Below are positions 75 to 50,117 of a stretch of DNA of 50,117 nucleotides, one piece after another (within the stretch, counting starts at the first letter, position 1; each line of letters begins with the position of its first letter). Under the pieces are notes generated by a model. It saw only the letters and a list, made by a program, of their open reading frames with translations, was not told the DNA's origin and searched no databases. The DNA is from Octopus bimaculoides. Its lineage: Eukaryota. The stretch lies in assembly GCF_001194135.2 (NCBI RefSeq), contig NC_068981.1, positions 194,053,769 to 194,103,885 of the forward strand, given 5' to 3'. The translations under genes were made by a program, and so were the position numbers.

Positions 75-460
75 GGCACAAGGGTGGCTCTGTGGTAAGT
101 AGCTTGCTTACCAACCACATGGTTCCAGGTTCAGTCCCACTGAGTGGTACCTTGGGTAAGTGTCTTCTATGGCCTTGGGCCAACCAAAGCCTGAGTGGAT
201 TTGGCAGGTGGAAACTGAAAGAAGCCCGTCATATATATATATATATGTGTGTGTGTGTCTGTGTTTGTGCCCCAGCATCGCTTGACAACCGATGCTGGTG
301 TGTTTACGTCCCCCGTAACTTAGCGGTTCAGCAAAAGAAACCGATAGAATACAAACTAGGTTTACAAAGAGTAAGTCCTGGGGTCAATCTGTTTGACTAA
401 AGGCGGTGGCTCCAGCATGGCCGCAGTCAAATGACTGGAACAAATAAAAGAATAAAAGAT
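75..460 (+). mobile_element. tRNA-derived SINE family A, full length (about 25 full or partial copies in the window)
   Basis: A-box-like TGGCTCTGTGGTAAG and B-box-like GGTTCAGTCCC. CORE-like ACCTTGGGTAAGTGTCTT, then GGAAACTGAAAGAAGCCCGTC, an internal (TA)/(TG)n linker, a second module ending GCATGGCCGCAGTCAAATGACTG, and an AAAAGA tail. Confidence 0.85.
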
Positions 461-8364: not shown

Positions 8365-8745
8365 GTGCAGGAGTGGCTGTGTGGTAAGAAGCTTGCTTCC
8401 TAATCTCATGGTTCCAGGTTCAGTCCCACACTGCGATGCACTTTTGCCAAGTGTCTTCTACTATAGCCTTGGGCCAACCAAAACCTTGTGAGTGCATTTG
8501 GTAGATGGAAACTGAAAGAAGCCCGTCATATATGTGTGTGTTTGTCCCCCCACCCCACTCCCACCGTTGCTTGACAACCAATGCTGGTGTGTTTACGTCC
8601 CCGAAACTTAGCGGTTCGGCAAGAGAGAGTGATACAATAAGTACTAGGCTTACAAAGAATAAGTCCTGGGATTGATTTGCTCAATTAAACGCGGTGCTCC
8701 AGCATGGCCGCAGTCAAATGACAAACAAGTAAAAGAGTAAAAGAA
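8365..8745 (+). mobile_element. SINE family A, full length
   Basis: Same head, linker and tail as 75-460. Confidence 0.85.
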
Positions 8746-21799: not shown

Positions 21800-22398
21800 G
21801 TGTGTGTATAGATTCAGCATGATACAGAATGTGAGAAGGCTGGCCCTTTAAAATATGGGTCCAACTTGTTTCTGCCAGCTGAGTGAACTGGAACCTTGTG
21901 AAATAAAGTGTCTTGCTCAAGGACACAATACACCACTAAATATCGAGCTCCTGACCCTATGATCATGAGTTGGATATCCTAACCACTAAGCCATCATACA
22001 CACCTTCATTTAACTTACGCATTTAAAGTTTCATGGGTATAGCATATGTCCACATCATCAGATGTTTGGAGAAGAGTGGAGAGAAATTAAAAGAATTTTA
22101 AAATGGCTTTTAAGTGAAAGTAGTTCACCCTCCTTTAGATACTAATGTAGGTAAACCAACCACATGGCTTTAGCTGACCGATGGAGGCCTAAATACTCTT
22201 ATCTAAAAGCCATTTTTAATTTCTTTTATATCCCCTTCATTTGAACATCTGATGATATAGACATGTCCTACAGCAATGTGGAATTGAAACGTGTGTATGT
22301 GTGTGTTTTATTATTTCAATGTCTGCCTTTTTTTCATGTGTAGGTTAAATGGAGGTGTGTATGGCTTAATGATTAGGATATTCAGCTCATGATCATGA

Positions 22399-22731
22399 AA
22401 AGCACCATTCGAGTGTGATTATTGCCAGTGCCACCTGACTGGCTTCCATGCCGGTGGCACATAAAGAGCAGCATTCAAGCGTGGTCGATGCCAGTGCCGG
22501 CTGACTGGTCCTGTGCTGGTGGGATATAAAAAGCACCATTCAAGTGTGGCCGTTGCCAGTGGCACATAAAAATCACTCACTACACTCTTGGAGTGGTTGA
22601 CGTTAGAAGGGCATCCAGCTATAGAACCCTTGCCAGATCAGATTGAAGCCTGGTGCAGACTTCTGGCTTGCCAGTTCTCAGTCAAACCATCCAACCCATG
22701 CCAGCATAGAAAGCAGATGTTAAACGACGAC
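22399..22731 (+). mobile_element. Retroposon family V nested in a family C SINE (22351-22398 and 22732-22958)
   Basis: The family C head (GGCTTAATGATTAGG...CTCATGATCATGAA) stops at the insertion and resumes with GTCATGAG...GTCCTTGAGCAAGACAC. Confidence 0.75.
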
Positions 22732-23091: not shown

Positions 23092-23452
23092 GGCCAGGTG
23101 CGACTGTGTGGTAAGAAGCTTGCTTCCCAACCACATGGGTCTGGGTTCATTCCCACTGCATGGCACCTTGGACAAGTGTCTTCTGCTATAGCCTCAGGCC
23201 GACCAAAGCCTTGTGAGAGGATTTGGTAGACAGAAACTGAAAGATGCCTGTCATGTGTGTCTGTGTTGTCTCCCACCATCACATGACAACCAATGTTGGT
23301 ATGCTTACATCCCCGTAACTTATGCTATCAGTCTCTTTTGCCGAGCTGCTAAGTACTAGGCTTGCAAAGAATAAGTCCTGGCGTCAATTTGTTCGACTAA
23401 AGGCGGTGCTCCAGCATGGCCTCAGTCAAATGACTGAAACAAGCAAAAGAAT
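23092..23452 (+). mobile_element. SINE family A, full length
   Basis: Same modules as 75-460. Confidence 0.8.
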
Positions 23453-23650
23453 ACGTTTCATGGGAGATTGCATACAAAAAACACCATTTATATGACAGGC
23501 ATATTTGTTTACAGTTAGCAATGATACGCACAATAGGCTTCTCTCAGTTTCCATCTACCAAGTCCATTCACAAGGATTTGGTCCTCTTCGGGCTTTAGTT
23601 GAAGACAATAGTTGAGGATGATATGCAGTAGGACTAGCTATATATACATA

Positions 23651-27533: not shown

Positions 27534-28701
27534 TTTTCTGATATGCAAGAACCCGTGTCACTGCGTGAACAAACATCAGTTCTGTCGTTCCTGCGTCACC
27601 GTATGGTCAGGAAGCGGGAATTCTGAAAACCACAACAAATGCCCCGTGTGTCGTGTGAGCGGCTACTATCTGCCGAGTGGTGCTATTGCAGATAACCTCA
27701 ACAACAGGCAAGTGCGTTGTCTCCTCCGCTCCTGCATATGGGTCGGTCAGCTGAAAAACATCCACAATCACCGTCATGTGCTCAATAAGAAACTACATCA
27801 CGAAGACAATTACAAGATGAGCAAGTCATGCCATAGCAACAACAACGATAGCAATAACAATAATTTGAATCTTAGAGACAGATGCTCTGAAATAACGGAG
27901 AGAGTTCTACCAAAGGAACCCTCGTCAGCAGCAGCTATCCTCCAAAGAATCCGGAATGAGAGGAAAGAAGCCAACTTGTCTTCAAATAATTTGTTCACCG
28001 AGGCCACCGCAGACACCACCACCACCCAATTGTCCCCTTCGTTAACAACCCCTAGTACAGGGCTCAGTTCTAGAAATGTTTTATCTTCTAGCAGTTCAAC
28101 ACCAGTAACTAATACTAATAATAATATTACCGATAATAATAATAGTAGTAGTTTAGTTAATTTTCAACGCCAACATCCAACACTTGACAACAACAACCAT
28201 GTGAATGAGAGAGCAAATGAGTCTATAGAGAATGTCCTTCGTTCGTTCATTCCTTCTACTACTACTACACATCCAACTCCTGTAAGTCGCCTTAATAATA
28301 ATAGTAGTAGTAGTAATAGCCTTTCTAGAAGTGCTCTTCAAGCAAACACCACCCCACCATCCTCTGCTCCACCGGTTACTGAGCCTGATAATGTTTCCAC
28401 CAACCCGAATAACAATTCCAATCGTGTCGGTCCTATCCACCATCGCTCTGTAAATCGCCGAACTGGCCCCAAGGAATACGAACGGCTACGGGCTCGCATG
28501 AGAGAGACCCGTCTTCGACTGGAACAAATGGAAACCACTCGCCGCGAATTGGCTTCTTTCCAGGAGAGACAAAGACTTCAGCATTTGGTCGAGGTGCGAG
28601 AACTTGGTCGGCAGCTGAACGAAGTGACATTCCAAATCCGGCGTCTGCTGAACCAGATGAGTGCCAACGAGGATCAGCCTCCCACCCAATTGGTTAATTA
28701 A
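27534..28701 (+). CDS. Terminal coding exon of a RING-finger (C3HC4-type) putative E3 ubiquitin ligase, with a TRAF/RNF151-like zinc finger, low-complexity N/S/T linker and C-terminal coiled coil; 5' exon(s) not located
   Basis: Polypyrimidine tract plus TTGCAG acceptor at 27500-27533. The exon opens with 1 nt of a split codon, then FLICKNPCHCVNKHQFCRSCVTVW...KCPVCR (RING ligands 3-8), then VRCLLRSCIWVGQLKNIHNH (C-x4-C-x-W-x-G-x-L...H). The frame is open to TAA at 28699-28701. The heptad-like EYERLRARMRETRLRLEQMETTRRELASFQ...QIRRLLNQM lies near the C-terminus. Confidence 0.85.
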
Positions 28702-32332: not shown

Positions 32333-32692
32333 AGGTGGCTGTGTGGTAAGTAGCTTGCTTACCAACTACATGGTTCCAGGTTCATTCTCACTGCGTGGCA
32401 CCTTGGGCAAGTGTCTTCTACTATAGCCTTGGGCCGACCAAAGCCTTGTGAGTGGATTTCGTAGACAGAAACTGGAAGAAGCCTGTCGTATATATGATGT
32501 GTGTTTGTCCACCAAACATCGCTTGACAACCAATGGTGTTGTGTTTACGTCCCCGGTTCGGCAAAAGAGACTGACGGAATAAGTACTAGGCTTCCAAAGA
32601 ATAAGTCCTGGGGCCGATTTGCTCGACTAAAGGTGGTGCTCCAGCATGGCCACAGTCAAATGATTGAAACAAGTAAAAAAAAAGGAAAAGAA
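32333..32692 (+). mobile_element. SINE family A, full length
   Basis: Same modules as 75-460. Confidence 0.85.
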
Positions 32693-33644: not shown

Positions 33645-35017
33645 NNNNNNNNNNNNNNNNNNNNNNNNNNNNNNNNNNNNNNNNNNNNNNNNNNNNNNNN
33701 NNNNNNNNNNNNNNNNNNNNNNNNNNNNNNNNNNNNNNNNNNNNNNNNNNNNNNNNNNNNNNNNNNNNNNNNNNNNNNNNNNNNNNNNNNNNNNNNNNNN
33801 NNNNNNNNNNNNNNNNNNNNNNNNNNNNNNNNNNNNNNNNNNNNNNNNNNNNNNNNNNNNNNNNNNNNNNNNNNNNNNNNNNNNNNNNNNNNNNNNNNNN
33901 NNNNNNNNNNNNNNNNNNNNNNNNNNNNNNNNNNNNNNNNNNNNNNNNNNNNNNNNNNNNNNNNNNNNNNNNNNNNNNNNNNNNNNNNNNNNNNNNNNNN
34001 NNNNNNNNNNNNNNNNNNNNNNNNNNNNNNNNNNNNNNNNNNNNNNNNNNNNNNNNNNNNNNNNNNNNNNNNNNNNNNNNNNNNNNNNNNNNNNTTTAGC
34101 ATTATTAGACCTCCTCAGTGAAACAGGTTTCACAATACATGCTGAAATAATGAGAGAATTACTAATCATTTAATATTAATTTTCCATGCTGGTGAACCAA
34201 TAGACTGCTTCAAGCTCCAAGGTCTGATTTGGCTGGATGCCCTTCCTAATGTCAACCACATTACAGCATATACTGGGTGCTTTCTTTTTTTTATGTGGCA
34301 CCAGCACTAGTGTACAATTTTCATCATCCCACTACCAAGTATGACATCACCCCTTCCTTTCTCATTCATAAACACAAGAGTATTATTACAGTAGATTATC
34401 TCGGTAACCATGGGAGCTATGAGAAAATACAAAGCCCAGCAACAACACCGGATCATTCTACACATGTAATTTTTCACGCAATTCCACCCAGTCGTTTGAC
34501 CATGAATCCCAAGACAAGATAAATTTGACATGGGTGATTCTATGTATAGATAACTATGATAAAGAAAGGAAACACAGAAATGTAGACTACTTTATTACAA
34601 GCTGCTACAAATATCCAATAAAAAACTCTACAAGCCTAATTAATTAAAAACAAAATGAAATATAATCCTTTTGAAATCACAAATTAGACTTTTCTTCAGG
34701 AATTCATTATTGGAATGAATGCGTTCTACCAACAAAAATATGAAAACCTTTACAACAGCCCAGAAAGGAGCAAACGAATTGTGATAGACAGAAATTAACA
34801 TGAACGCCAGACTGATCAAAACAGGAAAATATATTTTTCCATTTTGTTTTGAATTAATTAGGTTTGACAACAACTTGGAGTAAAGTAACGTCTACACTTT
34901 TATTTTTCCCTTTCCTTATTATACTTTATTGTACAAATACTGAATATATAGACCTTTTGTATATTCTATGCTTTGGATTGAACCGGCGGACTTGGATGTT
35001 TAACATCCCTTTGAAGG

Positions 35018-35056
<39 letters not shown>

Positions 35057-35859
35057 NNNNNNNNNNNNNNNNNNNNNNNNNNNNNNNNNNNNNNNNNNNN
35101 NNNNNNNNNNNNNNNNNNNNNNNNNNNNNNNNNNNNNNNNNNNNNNNNNNNNNNNNNNNNNNNNNNNNNNNNNNNNNNNNNNNNNNNNNNNNNNNNNNNN
35201 NNNNNNNNNNNNNNNNNNNNNNNNNNNNNNNNNNNNNNNNNNNNNNNNNNNNNNNNNNNNNNNNNNNNNNNNNNNNNNNNNNNNNNNNNNNNNNNNNNNN
35301 NNNNNNNNNNNNNNNNNNNNNNNNNNNNNNNNNNNNNNNNNNNNNNNNNNNNNNNNNNNNNNNNNNNNNNNNNNNNNNNNNNNNNNNNNNNNNNNNNNNN
35401 NNNNNNNNNNNNNNNNNNNNNNNNNNNNNNNNNNNNNNNNNNNNNNNNNNNNNNNNNNNNNNNNNNNNNNNNNNNNNNNNNNNNNNNNNNNNNNNNNNNN
35501 NNNNNNNNNNNNNNNNNNNNNNNNNNNNNNNNNNNNNNNNNNNNNNNNNNNNNNNNNNNNNNNNNNNNNNNNNNNNNNNNNNNNNNNNNNNNNNNNNNNN
35601 NNNNNNNNNNNNNNNNNNNNNNNNNNNNNNNNNNNNNNNNNNNNNNNNNNNNNNNNNNNNNNNNNNNNNNNNNNNNNNNNNNNNNNNNNNNNNNNNNNNN
35701 NNNNNNNNNNNNNNNNNNNNNNNNNNNNNNNNNNNNNNNNNNNNNNNNTGTAGAAACCAAGGCAAATCAGACTGGAACCTGGTGCAGCCTCCTGGCTTCC
35801 CAGACCCCAGTCCAACCCATGCCAGCATGGAAAACGGACGTTAAACGATGATGATGATG

Positions 35860-35895
<36 letters not shown>

Positions 35896-36491
35896 CATAT
35901 GGTTCTGGGTTCAGTCCCACTGCATGGCACCTTGGGCAAGAGTCTTCTACTAGAGACTTGGTCCGACCAAAGCCTTGTTAGTGGATTTGGTAGATGGAAA
36001 CTGAAAGAAGCATGTGGTGTGTGTGTGTGTCACACCGCTTAACTGGTGTTGACTTGTATACATCCCCGCAATCCAGCGGTTCAGCAAAAAAGACCAACAG
36101 TATCAAGCTTTAAAAAAAGTCCCCGGGCCAATTTGTTCAACAAAACCCTTCAAGGTGGTGCCCCAGCATGGCCTCAGTCTATTACAAGGTATATATACAT
36201 ACACACTTAGTTCTTCTAAAGAATGAGAGAGCTTTCCTTAGTTGTAGAGGAATCTTCTACTACTTTCCAGATATAAACAGCCTGGGTGTTCCTAAAGAAA
36301 TGCGGTGAAATACTGTTTAAATCCTTTAATCTCTAGCGTACGCGGTGTTAAGAGCTGGGCATTGAGTGCGAGATTAACACAAGAAAACAAAATTAAAAGG
36401 ATTTAAGTTGATCTGTTAAGGTCAAAGGGAGATAACTAAAAGATTAAAATTTTTTATCTTTTTTTTTTTATACAATATTTTATATGTCAAA

Positions 36492-36799: not shown

Positions 36800-37136
36800 C
36801 TATGTCATTCTACTCTGTTGGAATATAAAATGACTCGACACATTCTAAACATTACCATATAAATTAATCACAATTCAAAACTGAGCAATTTACCAGAAAA
36901 GTCTAAAATGGTTGATTGAGTGTTTTTGATGTTGAAATATTTTTGAAATTATATAGGCATAGGTGTGGCTATGTGGTAAGGAGTTTGCTTCCCAACCACA
37001 CGATTCCAGGTTCAGCTTCTCTGCATAGCACCTTGGGTAAATGTCTTCTATAGCCTCGAACCAATCAAAGTTTTGTCAGTGGGTTTGCTAGACGGAAACT
37101 AAAAGAAGCCACTTCGTATATGTGTGTGTGTATATA

Positions 37137-37521
37137 GGCACAGGAGTGAGTATGTGGTAAGAGCTTGCTTCCCAACTACATGGCTCCAGGTTCAGTCCCA
37201 CTGTGTGATACCTTGGGCAAGTGTCTTCTATTATAGCCTTGGGCTGACCAAAGCCCATTTGGTAGATGGAAACTGAAAGAAGCTCATCATATGCTTATAT
37301 ATGTGTGTGTGTATTCATTTGTGTGTCTGTTTGTCACCACCACCACTACTGCTTGACAACCGATGTCGGTGTGTTTATGTCCCCATAACTTAGCAGTTCG
37401 GCAAAAGAGAATGATAGAATAAGTATACTAGGCTTACAAAGAATAAGTCCTGGGGGTCAATTTGTTCGACTAAAGGCAGTGCCCCAGTGTGGCCACAGTC
37501 AAGTGACTGAAACAAGTAAAA

Positions 37522-37524
<3 letters not shown>
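37137..37524 (+). mobile_element. SINE family A, full length (another head at about 36955-37130)
   Basis: Same modules as 75-460. Confidence 0.8.
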
Positions 37525-37561
<37 letters not shown>

Positions 37562-37885
37562 CAACACCGCTTGGCAACTGGTGTTGGTGTGTTTACATCC
37601 ACATAACTTAGCAGTTCAGTAAAAAAGAGGCCAACAGTCAAAGTACCAAGCTTTAAAAAAAAAACGTACTGAGATTGATTCGTTTCACTAAAAGTTCTTC
37701 CAGGCAGTGCTCCAGCATGACCACAGTCTAATAACAATCAAATAAGGGATAAGGTCAATCTGTTGAGGTCATTAGTTTCCATCATGTGACATTTTGAATT
37801 AGCTGGGGTTTTTTTGTTTTTTTTTAAAATTCCTTGATCTAAAGACAATTTTGGGGACAACTCTTAAAGCTTGGCACAGAATACG

Positions 37886-38281
37886 TTTTTACTCTTGTTT
37901 CAGTCATTTGACTGTGGCCATGCTGGAGCACCACCTTTTTAGTCGAGCTAATCGACCCCAGGACTTATTCTTTGTAAGCCTAGTACTTATTCTATCAGTC
38001 TCTCTCGCTGAACCCGCTAAGTTACAGGGACATAAACACACCAGCATCGGTTATCAAGCGATGTTGGGTGGGGGGACAAACACAGACACACAAACATATA
38101 CACACATATACATATATACGACAGGCTTCTTTTCAGTTTCCGTCTACCAAATCCACTCACAAGGCTTTGGTTGGCCCGAGGCTCTAGCAGAAGACACTTG
38201 CCCAAGGTGCCACAGTGGGACTGAACCCGCAACCATGTGGATCGTAAGCATGTTACTTACCACACAGCCACTCCTGCGCCT
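37886..38281 (-). mobile_element. SINE family A, full length, minus strand
   Basis: Reverse complement of the family A head (CTTACCACACAGCCACTCCTGCGCC) and tail (TTTTACTCTTGTTTCAGTCATTTGACTG). Confidence 0.85.
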
Positions 38282-39602
38282 ATGATTGTTTAAAGTGGGT
38301 TAAGGAAACACTTATTTCAAAAATTATAATAACTTTGGCAAATGTTATAATAATTTCTAGCAATTTTGAAGAAAGGGAGAAAGTCATGCTCCTCCACCAC
38401 CACCAGTACTTTAATGCCACTTTATTTTACCAACCCACAAAATGTGAAAACCAGAGCTACCCCAGCAGAATTTGATTTCAGAATGTAAAGAGTTAGAAGT
38501 AACGCCCCTAGGCATTTTGTCCAGCATGCTAAGGATTCTGCCAGATCACTGCTTTGATAATAATCCCTCCTACCTTTGGCACAAGGCCTGAAATGGGGGA
38601 GGGGATAGTCAATTACATCAACCCCAGTACACAACAGGTATTTATTTTATTAATCCCTAAAGGATGAAAGGCAAAGTTGAACACTGAATGTAAAACCAGA
38701 TGAACTGGCACGAAGCATTTTGTCTGGCTAGCTAATAATTCTGTGAGGCCACTGCCTTCATCATCATCATTTAATGTCCATTGTCGATGCTGGCCTGGGT
38801 TGGACGGTTTGACCAGGGCTGACAAGCTGGAGAGCTGTACCAAGTTCCAGTCAGATTTGGCATGGTTTCTACAGCTGATGTCTTTCCAAATGCCAATCAC
38901 TCAAAGTGTAATGGGTGCTTTTACGTGCTACTATTTCTGACTGTAATTCCATTTAGACATGGAAAGGTCACAGTTATCTCCCTTAGACAAAGAGGTGATA
39001 TAGTGCAACCTGGAGGAAATAGCCGACAATATCCCTCAAATTACAACCTACAAGCTTCAAAAAAAATAAAATACGGACACTGAATGGGTATCTTTTATTT
39101 GATTTCAGTCACTGGACTGCGACCAGACTTGAGCACCGCTATAAAGCGTCGGGCATATTCTATTACATCGAAGTCAGTACTTGTGGGGATTGACGTGCTG
39201 TTCGATAAATTAAATAGCAAATGTATCAGATTATATATAATCGAACTCTTGAAGGTGGTGCCCCAGCATGGCTACAGGTTAATGAAACTACTCAAATTAT
39301 AAACAATATCGTGATTATTTTATCGATTTTGAAAGAAAAAGAAAAATCAATCCGTTTAGAAAGTAAAGGGAAGTAACTGAGTTATCGTGTTCCATCTAAA
39401 GAAAAATATAATGGAAAATAAATTAATGGCTTCCATTGATTTTCTCTCACCCACCCTCATTCTACCCTGGAAGTTTTGTCTTCCAATTTCATTTACATCT
39501 AGTATTTCTCTTGCGGAATATGACATCGATCGCAGTACTTTGCTGGTTCTTTATTTCTATCGATCATGCAAGGATAAAAGTCCAAGCGGACCGTCATACC
39601 TA

Positions 39603-47750: not shown

Positions 47751-48970
47751 CCACTTTCCGTCTTTATGTAAAGGGCAGTGAATGAATGTGTGAAGACATT
47801 AGTTGTGCTTTGAATATACAGAGACTTAAAAGTAGTCTTTCTAGTTAGCACGAGATAACGAGATGGAGTTTGGTCCGTTCTGCTGGCGCACGTGGAAGAT
47901 TGATATCGTGTGTAAGACCAGCGTTAACGCGATAGAACAGAACCGCAGGTCTGGAGTCCTTTAGAAGCGAGACAAGGAACTCGGTTGACTATGGCTGCGA
48001 CTACATTATATAAATGACAATCGGACGTGTCAGAGAACGCTTGCTCGAGGGAGCCGGTCTATTCACCAACACAGACTGAATAGAGCTGTAAACCAACAGT
48101 GTCGTTTGCGCATACTCGGAGATCCAAAAATTCACTTTTAAACAACTGCTAATAGACATGCTACACTTAATGCGTGTAAGGGAAGGCCATTTGATAAGCT
48201 GATAAAGTTTTTGTAAGGTAAAGAATATATTTTGTCTCAAAGTCAAAAATGTAGTAAAAACCTCAACACCCGCCCATATATTTATGTTCACATACGACGG
48301 GCTTTCGGTTGCCGTCTACCAAATCATCTCGCGTTTTGGTCAGCACTGGGCTACCAAAAGAAATACTTGCCTAAAGTACCATGAAATGGGACTGAACCTG
48401 GAGCCATTTGGTTGGTAAGCAAACTTACCACGCACCCCGCATTTAGATATTTCCTTAAGCCTACGGTAGTAAAGTAGAATTAACAGTTTTGTACACAGAC
48501 AACACAAAAACCGAGGGTCCATTCCGAATTTACAAATCAAAGTAAAAACAATAAAAAAAAATAAAAAATAAAAAAAAAAACCACGGTCCGCGCAGTTTCT
48601 GTTACATAAAAGATTGAGAAAGGAAGGATATTTGTGGGGCAGATATTCACCTGGGAACATTAGTGACATAAGTGAAATGAGATCAAGCAGGAACCGAACG
48701 CTTTCCTGTATCTCAACAGTTATTAACTTAGTGACAGAACTAATTAGCAATTAAGACTATTGAAATACACACATCGCTATCTGAAGTATTTGAGGACAAG
48801 AAATGCAGGTGATGGAAAACAATGGGATAGAAAATAAGATTTTAAAGATTCATCTATATTAATTCTTGTTCATACAATTGGGAATGTAGTGTTTAATATT
48901 GTGGAATGTTTCGGTAAAGGAAAACAAATGAAGCGAATGGTTTTGGTATCACCGAGAAATCGTTGCTAAG

Positions 48971-49009
<39 letters not shown>

Positions 49010-49319
49010 CAGATTAGGAACATGATCTGGTTTTAAACTTAGTATAAAAAGAAAATCGATTCCAGTACTTGTCTGGTACTTTATTTTAGATCAACGCCAG
49101 AAGGATGGAAAGTGAAGATGTACCAAGATGATCAAACATTTGTAGATTAAAAGAAATGAAATGTTAAAATTCCTTTCCTGTAAATATCTTCAGTTGAATT
49201 CTTTTCCAATCAATGAGGTTAGGTGGTGATGTGCATGGAGAGAAGAACCCAAAATATCATACAAACTTTAAAAATAAAAGAATTCTGCAAAGTCCGAATT
49301 TGAAATTCATAGAAAATAA

Positions 49320-49697
49320 TCAAACGTCTTTTGGTTCAGAACCAAATTTCTTTGGTTCATCCTTACAAATATCGTCGGCATCATGAACTGACAACGGCGA
49401 GATAAATCGAAATGACAATTTCCTGAGACGTTTTAGGCTGACATAATTAATGATCTTCGCACGAGATTTCTGTGTAAATAGCTTCAACTCAAATTCTTCG
49501 ATTGAAATTAAACAAGAAATTTTATGAATAAAAGAAGACCTGTTTGATTTTGGGTATTTCCGGCCATGGCGACGAACTATTCTGCTGGGACGATAACGCT
49601 TTGGTTTTACTACTCCTTTCGGTTTGGTTCGTCTTTTAGCAACATTGCTCAAAGATTTTCCAGTAGAATCTGTTGGTTGTAGCTTCCGGCTGACCAT
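49320..49697 (-). CDS. Highly divergent histone H3-like ORF (125 aa from the second Met; variant or pseudogene), lacking most of helix alpha3
   Basis: MVSRKLQPTDSTG aligns ungapped to H3 MARTKQTARKSTG (M, K4, S10-T11-G12). GVVKPKRYRPSRIVRRHGRKYPKS vs [24 protein letters not shown] gives 13/24 identities ungapped. ICKDEPKKFGSEPKDV vs LCAIHAKRVTIMPKDI is also ungapped (C110, K115, PKD). TGA falls at the Q125 position and is followed by L (L126). The frame extends upstream to an ATG at 49760. Confidence 0.7.
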   Translation of the reverse strand: MVSRKLQPTDSTGKSLSNVAKRRTKPKGVVKPKRYRPSRIVRRHGRKYPKSNRSSFIHKISCLISIEEFELKLFTQKSRAKIINYVSLKRLRKLSFRFISPLSVHDADDICKDEPKKFGSEPKDV

Positions 49698-50117
49698 TTC
49701 TCTAAACTGACCGCAAACCTTGACAGTGTAGCCTTGATAATTTGTCTTTTTATCAATCATTTAAATAATAAATCGTTGACATTTGAAGTTAGTGTTGGTA
49801 GGGAAAGTCCATTAGATGCGGCAGGAGTAAATAAAATTTATGCAACTAAAATGTACCTGATAAAAGAAAGGTTACGGTTTCGAATAAAGCAAAAGTTCTT
49901 CGACCGTTTACAAAATAGCTTGAAGGTGGTGCTGAAACAGGGAAGCAGCGGACCAAGTACAATTCAGATTATATAAAATTATATTATATTATATAAAATT
50001 TATATATGTATATATATATTTAACATGTACACTAGCGCAGACCTGTAAAATGATTTATTATACATTAAAATAAATTATTTTTCCATGTTGTTGGCAGTGA
50101 AACGATCGTAACTTCAT

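What the first reader, a model, noticed from the sequence alone, without database searches (positions are those of the whole stretch)
49320..49856. Extremely divergent histone H3-like gene with a longer loop 1 and truncated alpha3: new variant or unusual pseudogene
Seen in sequence: three separate ungapped blocks match H3. (1) The N-tail keeps M, K4 and S10-T11-G12, but K9 is D. (2) The KPxRYRP...RxYxKS block has 13/24 identity. (3) C110...K115...PKD(V) precedes a TGA at Q125, which is followed by L126. The protein is about 7 residues longer between K56 and C110, mostly in loop 1 (FTQKSRAKIINY vs KTDLRF). Q68, H113 and T118 are not conserved. A strong acceptor (CCTTTCTTTTATCAG) sits upstream on the minus strand at 49857-49872, the homologous ATG has good context (GAAATGG), and no histone 3' stem-loop is visible. 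Established: a longer loop 1 and loss of Q68 are CenH3/CENP-A traits; 5' UTR introns and no stem-loop are traits of replication-independent variants such as H3.3; H113/D123 and alpha3 form the H3-H3 interface. Inference: very heavy amino-acid change with an intact 125-146 codon frame in AT-rich DNA is unexpected for a neutrally decaying pseudogene. It could be a fast-evolving lineage-specific (possibly germline) H3 derivative unable to form a normal tetramer.
Basis: partly seen in the sequence, partly recalled or inferred. Interest (0 to 1): 0.8.

Follow-up and report, generated by a model that had tools for sequence, protein, structure and literature searches.

The report
Octopus gene descended from histone H3
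A small intronless reading frame at the window's end is an octopus-specific gene whose front third still resembles histone H3; no histone fold is detectable, so it is better called an H3-derived orphan than a histone variant or dead pseudogene.

Summary
The ORF is real: 49320-49697 on the minus strand, 125 codons. Only its N-terminal part is significantly H3-like (H3 residues about 8-64, core GVxKPxRYRP...RxYxKS, 13/24). The C-terminal "C110/K115/PKD" block is at chance level and is absent in one orthologue. No histone fold was detected: no Pfam hit, near-zero bits against an H3 fold-only HMM, only 28 hhalign columns, and two low-confidence AlphaFold models.

The ORF is not a dead pseudogene. 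Intact syntenic orthologues exist in Octopus vulgaris (annotated hypothetical protein CAI9714696.1) and in a third, unnamed octopod. All ORF indels are multiples of three, while the flanks carry many other indels. The deep branch shows purifying selection (omega about 0.3, p = 3e-4). The window and O. vulgaris terminal branches change at the neutral rate (omega about 1.2-1.5) with the frame intact.

Conservation peaks sit on an upstream block and on an AATAAA block. No expression data could be checked.

Best reading: a lineage-restricted, fast-evolving, basic, H3-derived protein, not a nucleosomal H3 variant. The loop-1 and alpha3 details are over-read.

The parts
49320..49697 (-). Conserved coding sequence: 125 codons plus TGA (49320-49322). 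The product is MVSRKLQPTDSTGK...SEPKDV, pI 10.7.
   Evidence: ORF list. Orthologous intact ORFs in O. vulgaris (128 aa) and an unnamed octopod (125 aa from the same ATG). All ORF indels are 3 or 6 nt. Deep-branch omega is about 0.3. pI.
49545..49700 (-). H3-derived segment, corresponding to the H3 tail, alphaN and the start of alpha1 (H3 residues about 5-58; orthologue profiles extend it to about 64). The core is 49542-49625, residues 25-52, matching H3 32-59.
   Evidence: tblastn E 1e-5. PDB H3 hits at E 1e-3. hhalign P 6.7e-4 over 28 columns. Shuffle z = 9-10. In-frame DNA diagonal is significant.
49323..49514 (-). C-terminal 64 codons with no detectable similarity to H3 or to anything else. 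This half is constrained on the deep branch as strongly as the N-terminal half.
   Evidence: Shuffle tests not significant. Fold-only HMM scores 1.3 bits or less. No frame-shifted H3 remnant. dN/dS is 0.22-0.32 against the third orthologue.
49698..49760 (-). In-frame upstream extension (a second ATG at 49760 preceded by TAA at 49761-49763). It is not conserved and is probably 5'UTR.
   Evidence: Indels of 10, 3, 9, 2 and 1 nt between species, with identity 0.72-0.89. In O. vulgaris the upstream ATG runs into a stop, read from the alignment.
49758..49877 (-). Most conserved block of the locus, a candidate promoter or 5'UTR. It contains the acceptor-like (or donor-like, CAG|GTACAT) motif at 49857-49871 and a TATA-like CATAAAT at 49836-49842.
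   Evidence: Identity 0.97 window-O. vulgaris and 0.88-0.92 window-third species, against a background of 0.91 and about 0.78. The functional assignment is inference.
49038..49097 (-). Conserved 3' block with AATAAA at 49080-49085, a candidate polyadenylation signal 235 nt after the stop codon.
   Evidence: Identity 1.00 window-O. vulgaris and 0.90 to the third species. Sequence read.
48974..49007 (-). Genomic A34 tract, present at the same place but with different length in all three species. It may be a relic of a retrocopy poly(A) tail or just a microsatellite.

Best explanation
This is a single-exon, octopod-restricted protein-coding gene that arose from a copy of a histone H3 gene. Only the H3 tail, alphaN and start of alpha1 (about 60 residues, including the DNA-contacting RYRP...R..RKYQKS motif) are still recognisable. 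The rest (about 65 residues) has either diverged beyond recognition or been replaced.

The product is a very basic protein of 125-128 aa (pI about 10.7) with a bipartite-NLS-like KR-x10-KRYRP stretch and a mildly acidic C-terminus. I infer that it acts as a small nuclear DNA- or chromatin-binding protein, or as an H3-tail/alphaN look-alike. I do not think it is a nucleosome core histone.

The reading frame was under purifying selection over most of the sampled octopod history. In the lineages leading to the window species and to O. vulgaris, amino-acid changes accumulate at about the neutral rate while the frame stays intact. That pattern fits either relaxed constraint or diversifying selection.

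Shown: H3 ancestry of the N-terminal part, synteny, frame preservation, deep-branch constraint, and the absence of a detectable histone fold. Inferred: transcription from the conserved upstream block to the conserved AATAAA, nuclear location, and DNA/chromatin binding.
For: H3 ancestry:
- Searches support it.
- The inferred three-species ancestor is closer to H3 than any descendant: 20/57 identities against 19, 17 and 16, and 13.1 bits against 6.7-11.2 bits.

Real gene:
- A syntenic orthologue exists in O. vulgaris (L001, OX597814.1:569821-570207, CAI9714696.1) and in Logan contigs L002-L005.
- ORF indels are 6, 3 and 6 nt only. Flanks carry about 17 gap openings per kb, 73% of them not multiples of three. 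P(no frameshift) is about 0.01 for window-O. vulgaris alone.
- The L002+stem branch has 22 synonymous and 16 nonsynonymous changes, omega 0.31, p = 3e-4 after correction for transition bias. Its codon-position differences are 9/7/22.
- Both halves of the ORF are constrained.
- Conservation peaks fall on an upstream block and on the AATAAA block.

Not a fold histone.

Single copy and lineage-restricted.

Basic composition.
Against: - There is no transcript evidence. The O. vulgaris model comes from a pipeline that also accepts ab initio predictions (PMC10700109).
- The exact proteins occur only on genomic contigs in the collection.
- On the window and O. vulgaris branches, omega is 1.15 and 1.54 and substitutions are flat across codon positions (5/8/6 and 8/11/7). 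That is what a recently dead gene would show.
- The absence of premature stops is only weakly informative there (P = 0.51 x 0.34).
- If the local rather than the background indel rate is used, the frameshift argument weakens to about p = 0.1.
- Only three species were available and the tree is unrooted.
- AlphaFold on a three-sequence alignment cannot exclude a fold.
- The proposed function is inference from composition and from which H3 residues survive.
Confidence: 0.55

Rival explanations
1. The copy in the window is a relic. The H3-derived gene was functional in the octopod ancestor and perhaps still is in the third species. It lost constraint in the lineage leading to the window species and O. 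vulgaris and is now an intact-looking young pseudogene.
For: - Window-O. vulgaris dN/dS is 0.98, and branch omegas are 1.15 and 1.54 with flat codon-position spectra.
- ORF identity of 0.897 is no higher than the intergenic background of 0.911.
- H3-identical residues are being lost independently in each lineage.
- The window protein is not annotated in the protein collection.
Against: - Both lineages keep the start, the stop and the frame. Their two indels are 6 and 3 nt, where about 6 events were expected, 73% of them frame-breaking (p about 0.01, or 0.1 with the local rate).
- The flanking promoter-like and AATAAA blocks are 0.97-1.00 identical, above background.
Confidence: 0.2
2. It is a true but extremely divergent histone-fold H3 variant, as the first reader proposed (CenH3-like long loop 1, shortened alpha3), that pairs with H4 in specialised chromatin.
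For: - Its length and charge are like H3: 125-128 aa, 33-35 K+R and 9-11 D+E, against 31 and 11 in H3.
- The H3-like part is collinear and starts at the H3 N-terminus.
- There are weak collinear matches at C110/K115/PKD in two of the three species (p about 0.02-0.06).
- Short helices are predicted roughly where alphaN and alpha1 would lie.
Against: - No Pfam PF00125 hit at E<=10.
- The fold-only HMM scores 1.3 bits or less.
- hhalign stops at H3 residue 59.
- No long alpha2 helix is predicted. Prolines (SPL, EPK) and species-specific indels fall in the would-be alpha2/L2 region.
- The C-terminal motif is lost in the lineage with the clearest purifying selection.
- A recognisable CENP-A already exists in molluscs (PMC12210499).
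Confidence: 0.12
3. The constrained unit is a non-coding transcript or regulatory element, marked by the highly conserved flanking blocks. On this reading the ORF is incidental.
For: Between the window and O. vulgaris, the flanks (0.955-0.97, locally 1.00) are more conserved than the ORF (0.897).
Against: Third-position excess and a synonymous-to-nonsynonymous ratio of 22:16 on the deep branch are coding signatures. ORF indels are all in frame while the flanks are full of other indels.
Confidence: 0.08
4. The H3 resemblance is chance or convergence in a lysine/arginine-rich de novo orphan gene.
For: E-values are modest (1e-3 against the PDB). hhalign probability is only 27%. Nothing H3-like was found at the scale of billions of proteins.
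Against: - Composition-preserving shuffles never reach the observed score (0/2000, z up to 10).
- Every PDB hit is an H3 or CenH3 chain.
- The match is collinear and ungapped over 57 codons in the inferred ancestor, and it is stronger in that ancestor than in the descendants.
Confidence: 0.05

Closest known systems
Canonical histone H3 / H3.3 (Pfam PF00125 core histone)
   Same: The tail-to-alphaN segment is homologous (13/24 in [24 protein letters not shown]). Overall length and charge are similar, and the gene is intronless. As in H3.3, there is no 3' stem-loop, and there is an AATAAA signal.
   Different: No detectable histone fold. The K4/K9/K27 contexts are altered or ambiguous. The H3.3-diagnostic residues cannot be aligned. 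It evolves at 10-15% amino-acid divergence between congeners, whereas H3 is almost invariant.
CenH3 / CENP-A
   Same: Rapid sequence evolution of an H3 derivative. The region where loop 1 would be is nominally longer.
   Different: CenH3s keep a Pfam-detectable histone fold and diverge mainly in the tail. Here it is the reverse: the tail and alphaN are kept and the fold is unrecognisable. Molluscs, including an octopus, already have a recognisable CENP-A (PMC12210499).
Histone H3 processed pseudogenes / retrocopies
   Same: Intronless, solitary copy away from any histone cluster (no other histone in 50 kb of the window or 20 kb of the O. vulgaris locus). A genomic A-tract lies downstream. The two terminal branches change at a neutral-like rate.
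   Different: No stop or frameshift in any of three species. The deep branch shows purifying selection. The flanking promoter-like and poly(A)-signal blocks are conserved.
Fast-evolving lineage-specific histone variants (e.g. mammalian short H2A variants, primate H3.Y/H3.5; from my own knowledge, not tested here)
   Same: Young, lineage-restricted histone derivatives with high dN/dS.
   Different: Those retain a clear histone fold and form nucleosomes. Their germline expression is documented, whereas nothing is known here.

Membership tests
Histone H3 family (Pfam PF00125, core histone fold) | Significant match to the histone-fold profile (alpha1-L1-alpha2-L2-alpha3) | tested here: not met
   No Pfam family at E<=10 for the window protein, both orthologues or the consensus. 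An H3 fold-only HMM scores 1.3 bits or less. hhalign aligns only H3 32-59.
Histone H3 family (Pfam PF00125, core histone fold) | H3-specific N-terminal tail / alphaN sequence (…[22 protein letters not shown]…) | tested here: met
   13/24 identities. E 1e-5 within the window. Only H3 and CenH3 chains are hit in the PDB. Shuffle z = 9-10.
Histone H3 family (Pfam PF00125, core histone fold) | Predicted or solved three-helix histone fold | tested here: inconclusive
   Two AlphaFold2 runs gave pLDDT 54-56 and pTM 0.13-0.17, with only short helices and no long alpha2. The alignment has only three sequences, so a fold cannot be excluded.
Histone H3 family (Pfam PF00125, core histone fold) | Heterodimerises with H4 and enters nucleosomes | not testable with these tools
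   Needs multimer prediction or biochemistry.
CenH3 / CENP-A | Recognisable histone fold with extended loop 1 / CATD | tested here: not met
   No alignment across loop 1 or alpha2 is better than chance. Human CENP-A was part of the H3 profile used.
CenH3 / CENP-A | Centromere localisation | not testable with these tools
   Needs experiment. Recognisable CENP-A genes are already reported in molluscs, with expression data from Amphioctopus fangsiao (PMC12210499).
Replication-independent H3 variant (H3.3-like) | No 3' stem-loop; polyadenylation signal | tested here: met
   No RF00032 match even at E<=10. AATAAA at 49080-49085 sits in a block that is 100% / 90% conserved.
Replication-independent H3 variant (H3.3-like) | H3.3 signature residues (S31, A87/I89/G90) in an otherwise near-identical H3 | tested here: not met
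   In the HMM register, position 31 is K. Positions 87-90 cannot be aligned.
Processed / decayed H3 pseudogene | Disabling stops or frameshifts, or neutral evolution throughout | tested here: not met
   The ORF is intact in three species and all indels are multiples of three. The deep branch has omega 0.31, p = 3e-4. The two terminal branches are neutral-like, so recent loss of constraint is not excluded.
Processed / decayed H3 pseudogene | Retrocopy hallmarks: intronless, 3' poly(A) tract, target-site duplications | tested here: inconclusive
   The ORF is intronless, and an A34 tract lies at 48974-49007. The tract is 72 nt beyond the only AATAAA. Target-site duplications were not searched for.
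Transposon-borne ORF | Multiple dispersed copies | tested here: not met
   One copy in the 50-kb window and one in the 20-kb O. vulgaris locus. Only one O. vulgaris protein cluster was found in 5.8 and 1.84 billion-protein searches. Whole-genome copy number could not be checked.

The most novel reading that the evidence does not exclude
An octopod-specific protein has kept only the H3 tail and alphaN, which carry the modification sites and contact DNA at the nucleosome entry/exit, and has shed the histone fold. It is maintained by selection and evolves adaptively in the Octopus vulgaris / window-species clade. It might act as a decoy or competitor for H3-tail readers and writers, or as a germline chromatin protein caught in genetic conflict. 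That would be a histone-to-non-histone transition caught in progress.
Probability: 0.15. Interest if true: 0.65.

Novelty: new variant of a known kind. Interest (0 to 1): 0.4.

Why it matters
Histone H3 is among the slowest-evolving proteins known, and its known derivatives (H3.3, CenH3, testis variants) all keep the histone fold. A derivative that keeps the tail and alphaN, loses any recognisable fold and is still held open by selection would show a different route by which histone genes give rise to new proteins. This may be relevant because cephalopods have expanded their core histone gene sets (PMC12210499).

It also exposes a practical blind spot. Surveys that define histones by a Pfam PF00125 hit, as that mollusc-wide survey did, cannot see such genes. 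The window species' own copy is not in the protein collection.

If the gene proves to be unexpressed, the finding reduces to an unusually well-preserved relic of a former gene.

Tried and rejected
- **Logan contigs as transcripts.** I hoped the Logan contigs L002-L005 (about 1.65 kb, from four runs) were transcripts. They are collinear with the genomic DNA, including the region upstream of the acceptor-like motif. They start in an (AC)n repeat, end in a dispersed repeat, and are identical to one another, so they are genomic.
- **Frame-shifted H3 remnant.** I tested whether the C-terminal half is H3 read in another frame. No diagonal in any frame of a degenerate back-translated H3 exceeds the shuffles.
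- **Exact-sequence look-up.** Neither the 146-aa nor the 125-aa window protein is on record.
- **Second word-based homology search.** Using the three-sequence profile found the same two proteins only.
- **Paper searches.** Searching for the SRR run numbers and for the UniProt and ENA accessions found nothing.
- **Fold search.** Not run, because both models are low-confidence and the matches would be meaningless.
- **Promoter/terminator scan.** The built-in scan is bacterial (sigma-70) and says nothing about a eukaryotic locus.
- **Weak snoRNA-like Rfam hits.** All lie far below gathering scores and were disregarded.
- **Plus-strand ORF over the conserved upstream block.** The 80-aa ORF at 49734-49976 was rejected as a gene, because 10-55-nt indels between species break its frame.
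- **Neighbouring histone genes.** None found in the window or in the O. vulgaris locus.

Full report
**1. What is there**

On the minus strand, an ORF runs from 49760 to 49320 (146 aa). The ATG at 49697 has a strong context (GAGAAATGG) and is the one conserved in other species. From it, the product is 125 aa: MVSRKLQPTDSTGKSLSNVAKRRTKPKGVVKPKRYRPSRIVRRHGRKYPKSNRSSFIHKISCLISIEEFELKLFTQKSRAKIINYVSLKRLRKLSFRFISPLSVHDADDICKDEPKKFGSEPKDV.

The upstream ATG at 49760 is immediately preceded by an in-frame TAA. The 21-codon extension is broken by non-triplet indels in the orthologues. It is therefore probably 5'UTR.

**2. Is the H3 resemblance real?**

It is real for the N-terminal part.
- tblastn of H3 against the whole window finds this locus alone: E 1e-5, 20/54 identities, 49700..49545. 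No other H3, H4, H2A or H2B signal appears in 50 kb.
- phmmer against all PDB sequences returns only H3 and CenH3 chains, E about 1e-3, covering query 10-61. A profile of three orthologues gives the same result over positions 4-61 = H3 8-64.
- Composition-preserving shuffles never reach the observed score (z = 8.8-10.3 for the window protein).
- A comparison with degenerate back-translated H3 DNA finds one significant diagonal. It is in frame and ungapped, covering ancestor codons 4-60 = H3 codons 9-65, with a score of 66.7 against a shuffle maximum of 57.

It is not demonstrable for the C-terminal part.
- After residue about 62, local alignment to H3 59-135 gives z = 1.2-2.7 in the window and O. 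vulgaris proteins and below zero in the third orthologue.
- An HMM of the H3 fold alone scores 1.3 bits or less.
- hhalign against an H3/CENP-A profile aligns only 28 columns, H3 32-59, P 6.7e-4.
- Pfam gives no hit at E<=10 for any of the proteins or their consensus.
- No frame-shifted H3 remnant exists.
In the third species it reads ISKDQPKKFDSEQKNV.
HMMER and tblastn prefer R4-K5 = R8-K9. The data do not decide between the two.

Two AlphaFold2 runs (window protein first, then the O. vulgaris protein first) gave pLDDT 54-56 and pTM 0.13-0.17. They show short helices only, and the best confidence falls on the RYRP/alphaN-like stretch. With three sequences in the alignment, this does not exclude a fold, but nothing supports one.

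Rfam finds no histone 3' stem-loop.

**3. Relatives elsewhere**

The word-indexed search of 5.8 billion proteins found two relatives:
- P0001, an Octopus vulgaris 'hypothetical predicted protein' (CAI9714696.1 / A0AA36EUK3), 128 aa, 77% identical.
- P0002, 146 aa, 74% identical, from Logan contigs of four SRA runs.

A profile search of 1.84 billion representatives and a second word-indexed search with the profile found nothing more. In the data at hand, the family is therefore confined to octopods.

The O. vulgaris gene lies at OX597814.1:569821-570207. Its 20-kb neighbourhood is collinear with the window, at 0.91 substitution-only identity and about 17 gap openings per kb. The window is therefore from a related octopus.

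[quoted passage not shown] I cannot name the window species or the third species.

The Logan contigs are genomic, not transcripts.

**4. Gene or pseudogene?**

*Frame.* In the three-way alignment, the only ORF indels are 6, 3 and 6 nt. The flanks contain dozens of indels, 73% of which are not multiples of three. With the background rate, about 6.3 indel events are expected in the ORF between the window and O. vulgaris. P(no frameshift) is then about 0.01. With the lower rate of the immediately adjacent, themselves conserved, flanks, it is about 0.1.

*Substitutions.* Pairwise NG86 dN/dS is 0.98 (window-O. vulgaris), 0.26 (window-third species) and 0.34 (O. vulgaris-third species).

Parsimony assignment on the unrooted three-taxon tree gives these synonymous:nonsynonymous counts, and after allowing for the observed transition bias, these omegas and codon-position differences:

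| Branch | S:N | Omega | Codon positions 1/2/3 |
|---|---|---|---|
| Window | 5:14 | 1.15 | 5/8/6 |
| O. vulgaris | 5:21 | 1.54 | 8/11/7 |
| Third species + stem | 22:16 | 0.31 (p = 3e-4) | 9/7/22 |

- Fisher's exact test between the two terminal branches and the deep branch gives p = 0.0014.
- Both halves of the ORF show the deep-branch constraint.
- Stop-free survival is uninformative on its own (P = 0.51, 0.34 and 0.30 per branch).
- ORF identity between the window and O. vulgaris (0.897) is no higher than intergenic background (0.911).

*Reading.* This is, or was, a translated gene under purifying selection over most of the sampled history. In the clade containing the window species and O. 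vulgaris, the protein changes as fast as neutral DNA while the frame is kept. That means relaxed constraint, diversifying selection, or very recent death. Three species cannot separate these.

**5. Anatomy of the putative transcription unit (inference)**

Sliding-window identity peaks at three places:
- An upstream block at 49758-49877: 0.97 window-O. vulgaris and 0.88-0.92 window-third species. It holds the acceptor-like or donor-like motif and a TATA-like CATAAAT at 49836-49842.
- The RYRP core of the ORF: 0.95 and 0.90.
- A block at 49038-49097 that contains AATAAA (49080-49085): 1.00 and 0.90.

This is what an intronless gene of about 750 nt with its own promoter and poly(A) signal would look like. 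No expression data could be consulted.

An A34 tract at 48974-49007 is shared in position by all three species. It could be a relic of retroposition, but it lies 72 nt beyond the AATAAA.

**6. What it probably does**

- The protein is as basic as H3 (pI 10.7, 33 K+R and 11 D+E), with a mildly acidic C-terminal 25 residues.
- What survives from H3 is the segment that, in the nucleosome, runs between the DNA gyres and contacts entry/exit DNA (R40, Y41, R42, P43, R49, R52, Y54, K56, S57). That description rests on established nucleosome structure and on my own knowledge.
- The stretch KR-x10-KRYRP looks like a bipartite nuclear localisation signal. This is also my own reading.
- I therefore favour a small nuclear DNA- or chromatin-binding protein, or an H3-tail/alphaN look-alike, over a nucleosome core component. 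This step is inference.

**7. Comparison with known kinds**

- It fails the defining test of the histone family, a fold profile match. It should not be filed as an H3 variant or as a CenH3.
- Mollusc CENP-A genes are Pfam-recognisable, and CENP-A expression is reported in an octopus (PMC12210499).
- That survey defined histones by PF00125 hits, so it could not have reported this gene.
- It also fails the test for a decayed pseudogene.
- It is best described as an H3-derived, lineage-restricted orphan gene. I found no description of it in the searchable literature.

**8. Verdict**

It is not shown to be a histone-fold variant.
- Interest is moderate. The case is unusual for H3, but it rests on three sequences and no expression data.

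Noticed in passing
window 27565-28701 (+): A 378-aa open frame whose start has a weak RING/C3HC4 zinc-finger match (Pfam E 1e-3, below the curated cut-off; TRIM30 RING domain in the PDB, E 4e-3). It is probably an exon of a TRIM-like gene.
   Followed up: partly
window 34001-36000: Very AT-rich stretch (GC 0.21) in which frames of 250-330 codons are open on both strands. None has a Pfam hit. It looks like low-complexity DNA rather than genes.
   Followed up: no
window 97-451, 8386-8738, 23104-23453, 32335-32678, 37132-37526, 37878-38283; L001 5286-5654 and 16847-17261: A dispersed repeat of about 360 bp, in both orientations, at 76-87% identity to copies in the O. vulgaris locus. It is presumably a SINE-like element. 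Smaller repeat families of about 130-200 bp also recur.
   Followed up: no
window 48974-49007 (read on the minus strand): A34 homopolymer, 313 nt downstream of the ORF's stop codon. It is present at the same site in O. vulgaris (interrupted) and in the third octopod (A11). It may be a retrocopy tail or a microsatellite.
   Followed up: partly
window 49758-49877 and 49038-49097: Two non-coding blocks flanking the ORF are more conserved than the ORF itself between the window and O. vulgaris (0.97 and 1.00, against 0.90). One holds CATAAAT and the other AATAAA.
   Followed up: partly
window 22394-22565: Tandem repeat with a 65-bp unit, 2.6 copies, 75% matches.
   Followed up: no
window 49960-50012 (minus-strand reading); L002 1-26: An AT-rich (TATAA/TA)n microsatellite upstream of the gene in the window and in O. 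vulgaris. At the same place, the third octopod contig begins with an (AC)n run.
   Followed up: no
window 48292-48470 / end of L002: The third species' contigs end exactly where a repeat begins (…CCAAATGGTTCCAGGTTC). That repeat also occurs elsewhere in the window, which explains why those assemblies stop there.
   Followed up: no
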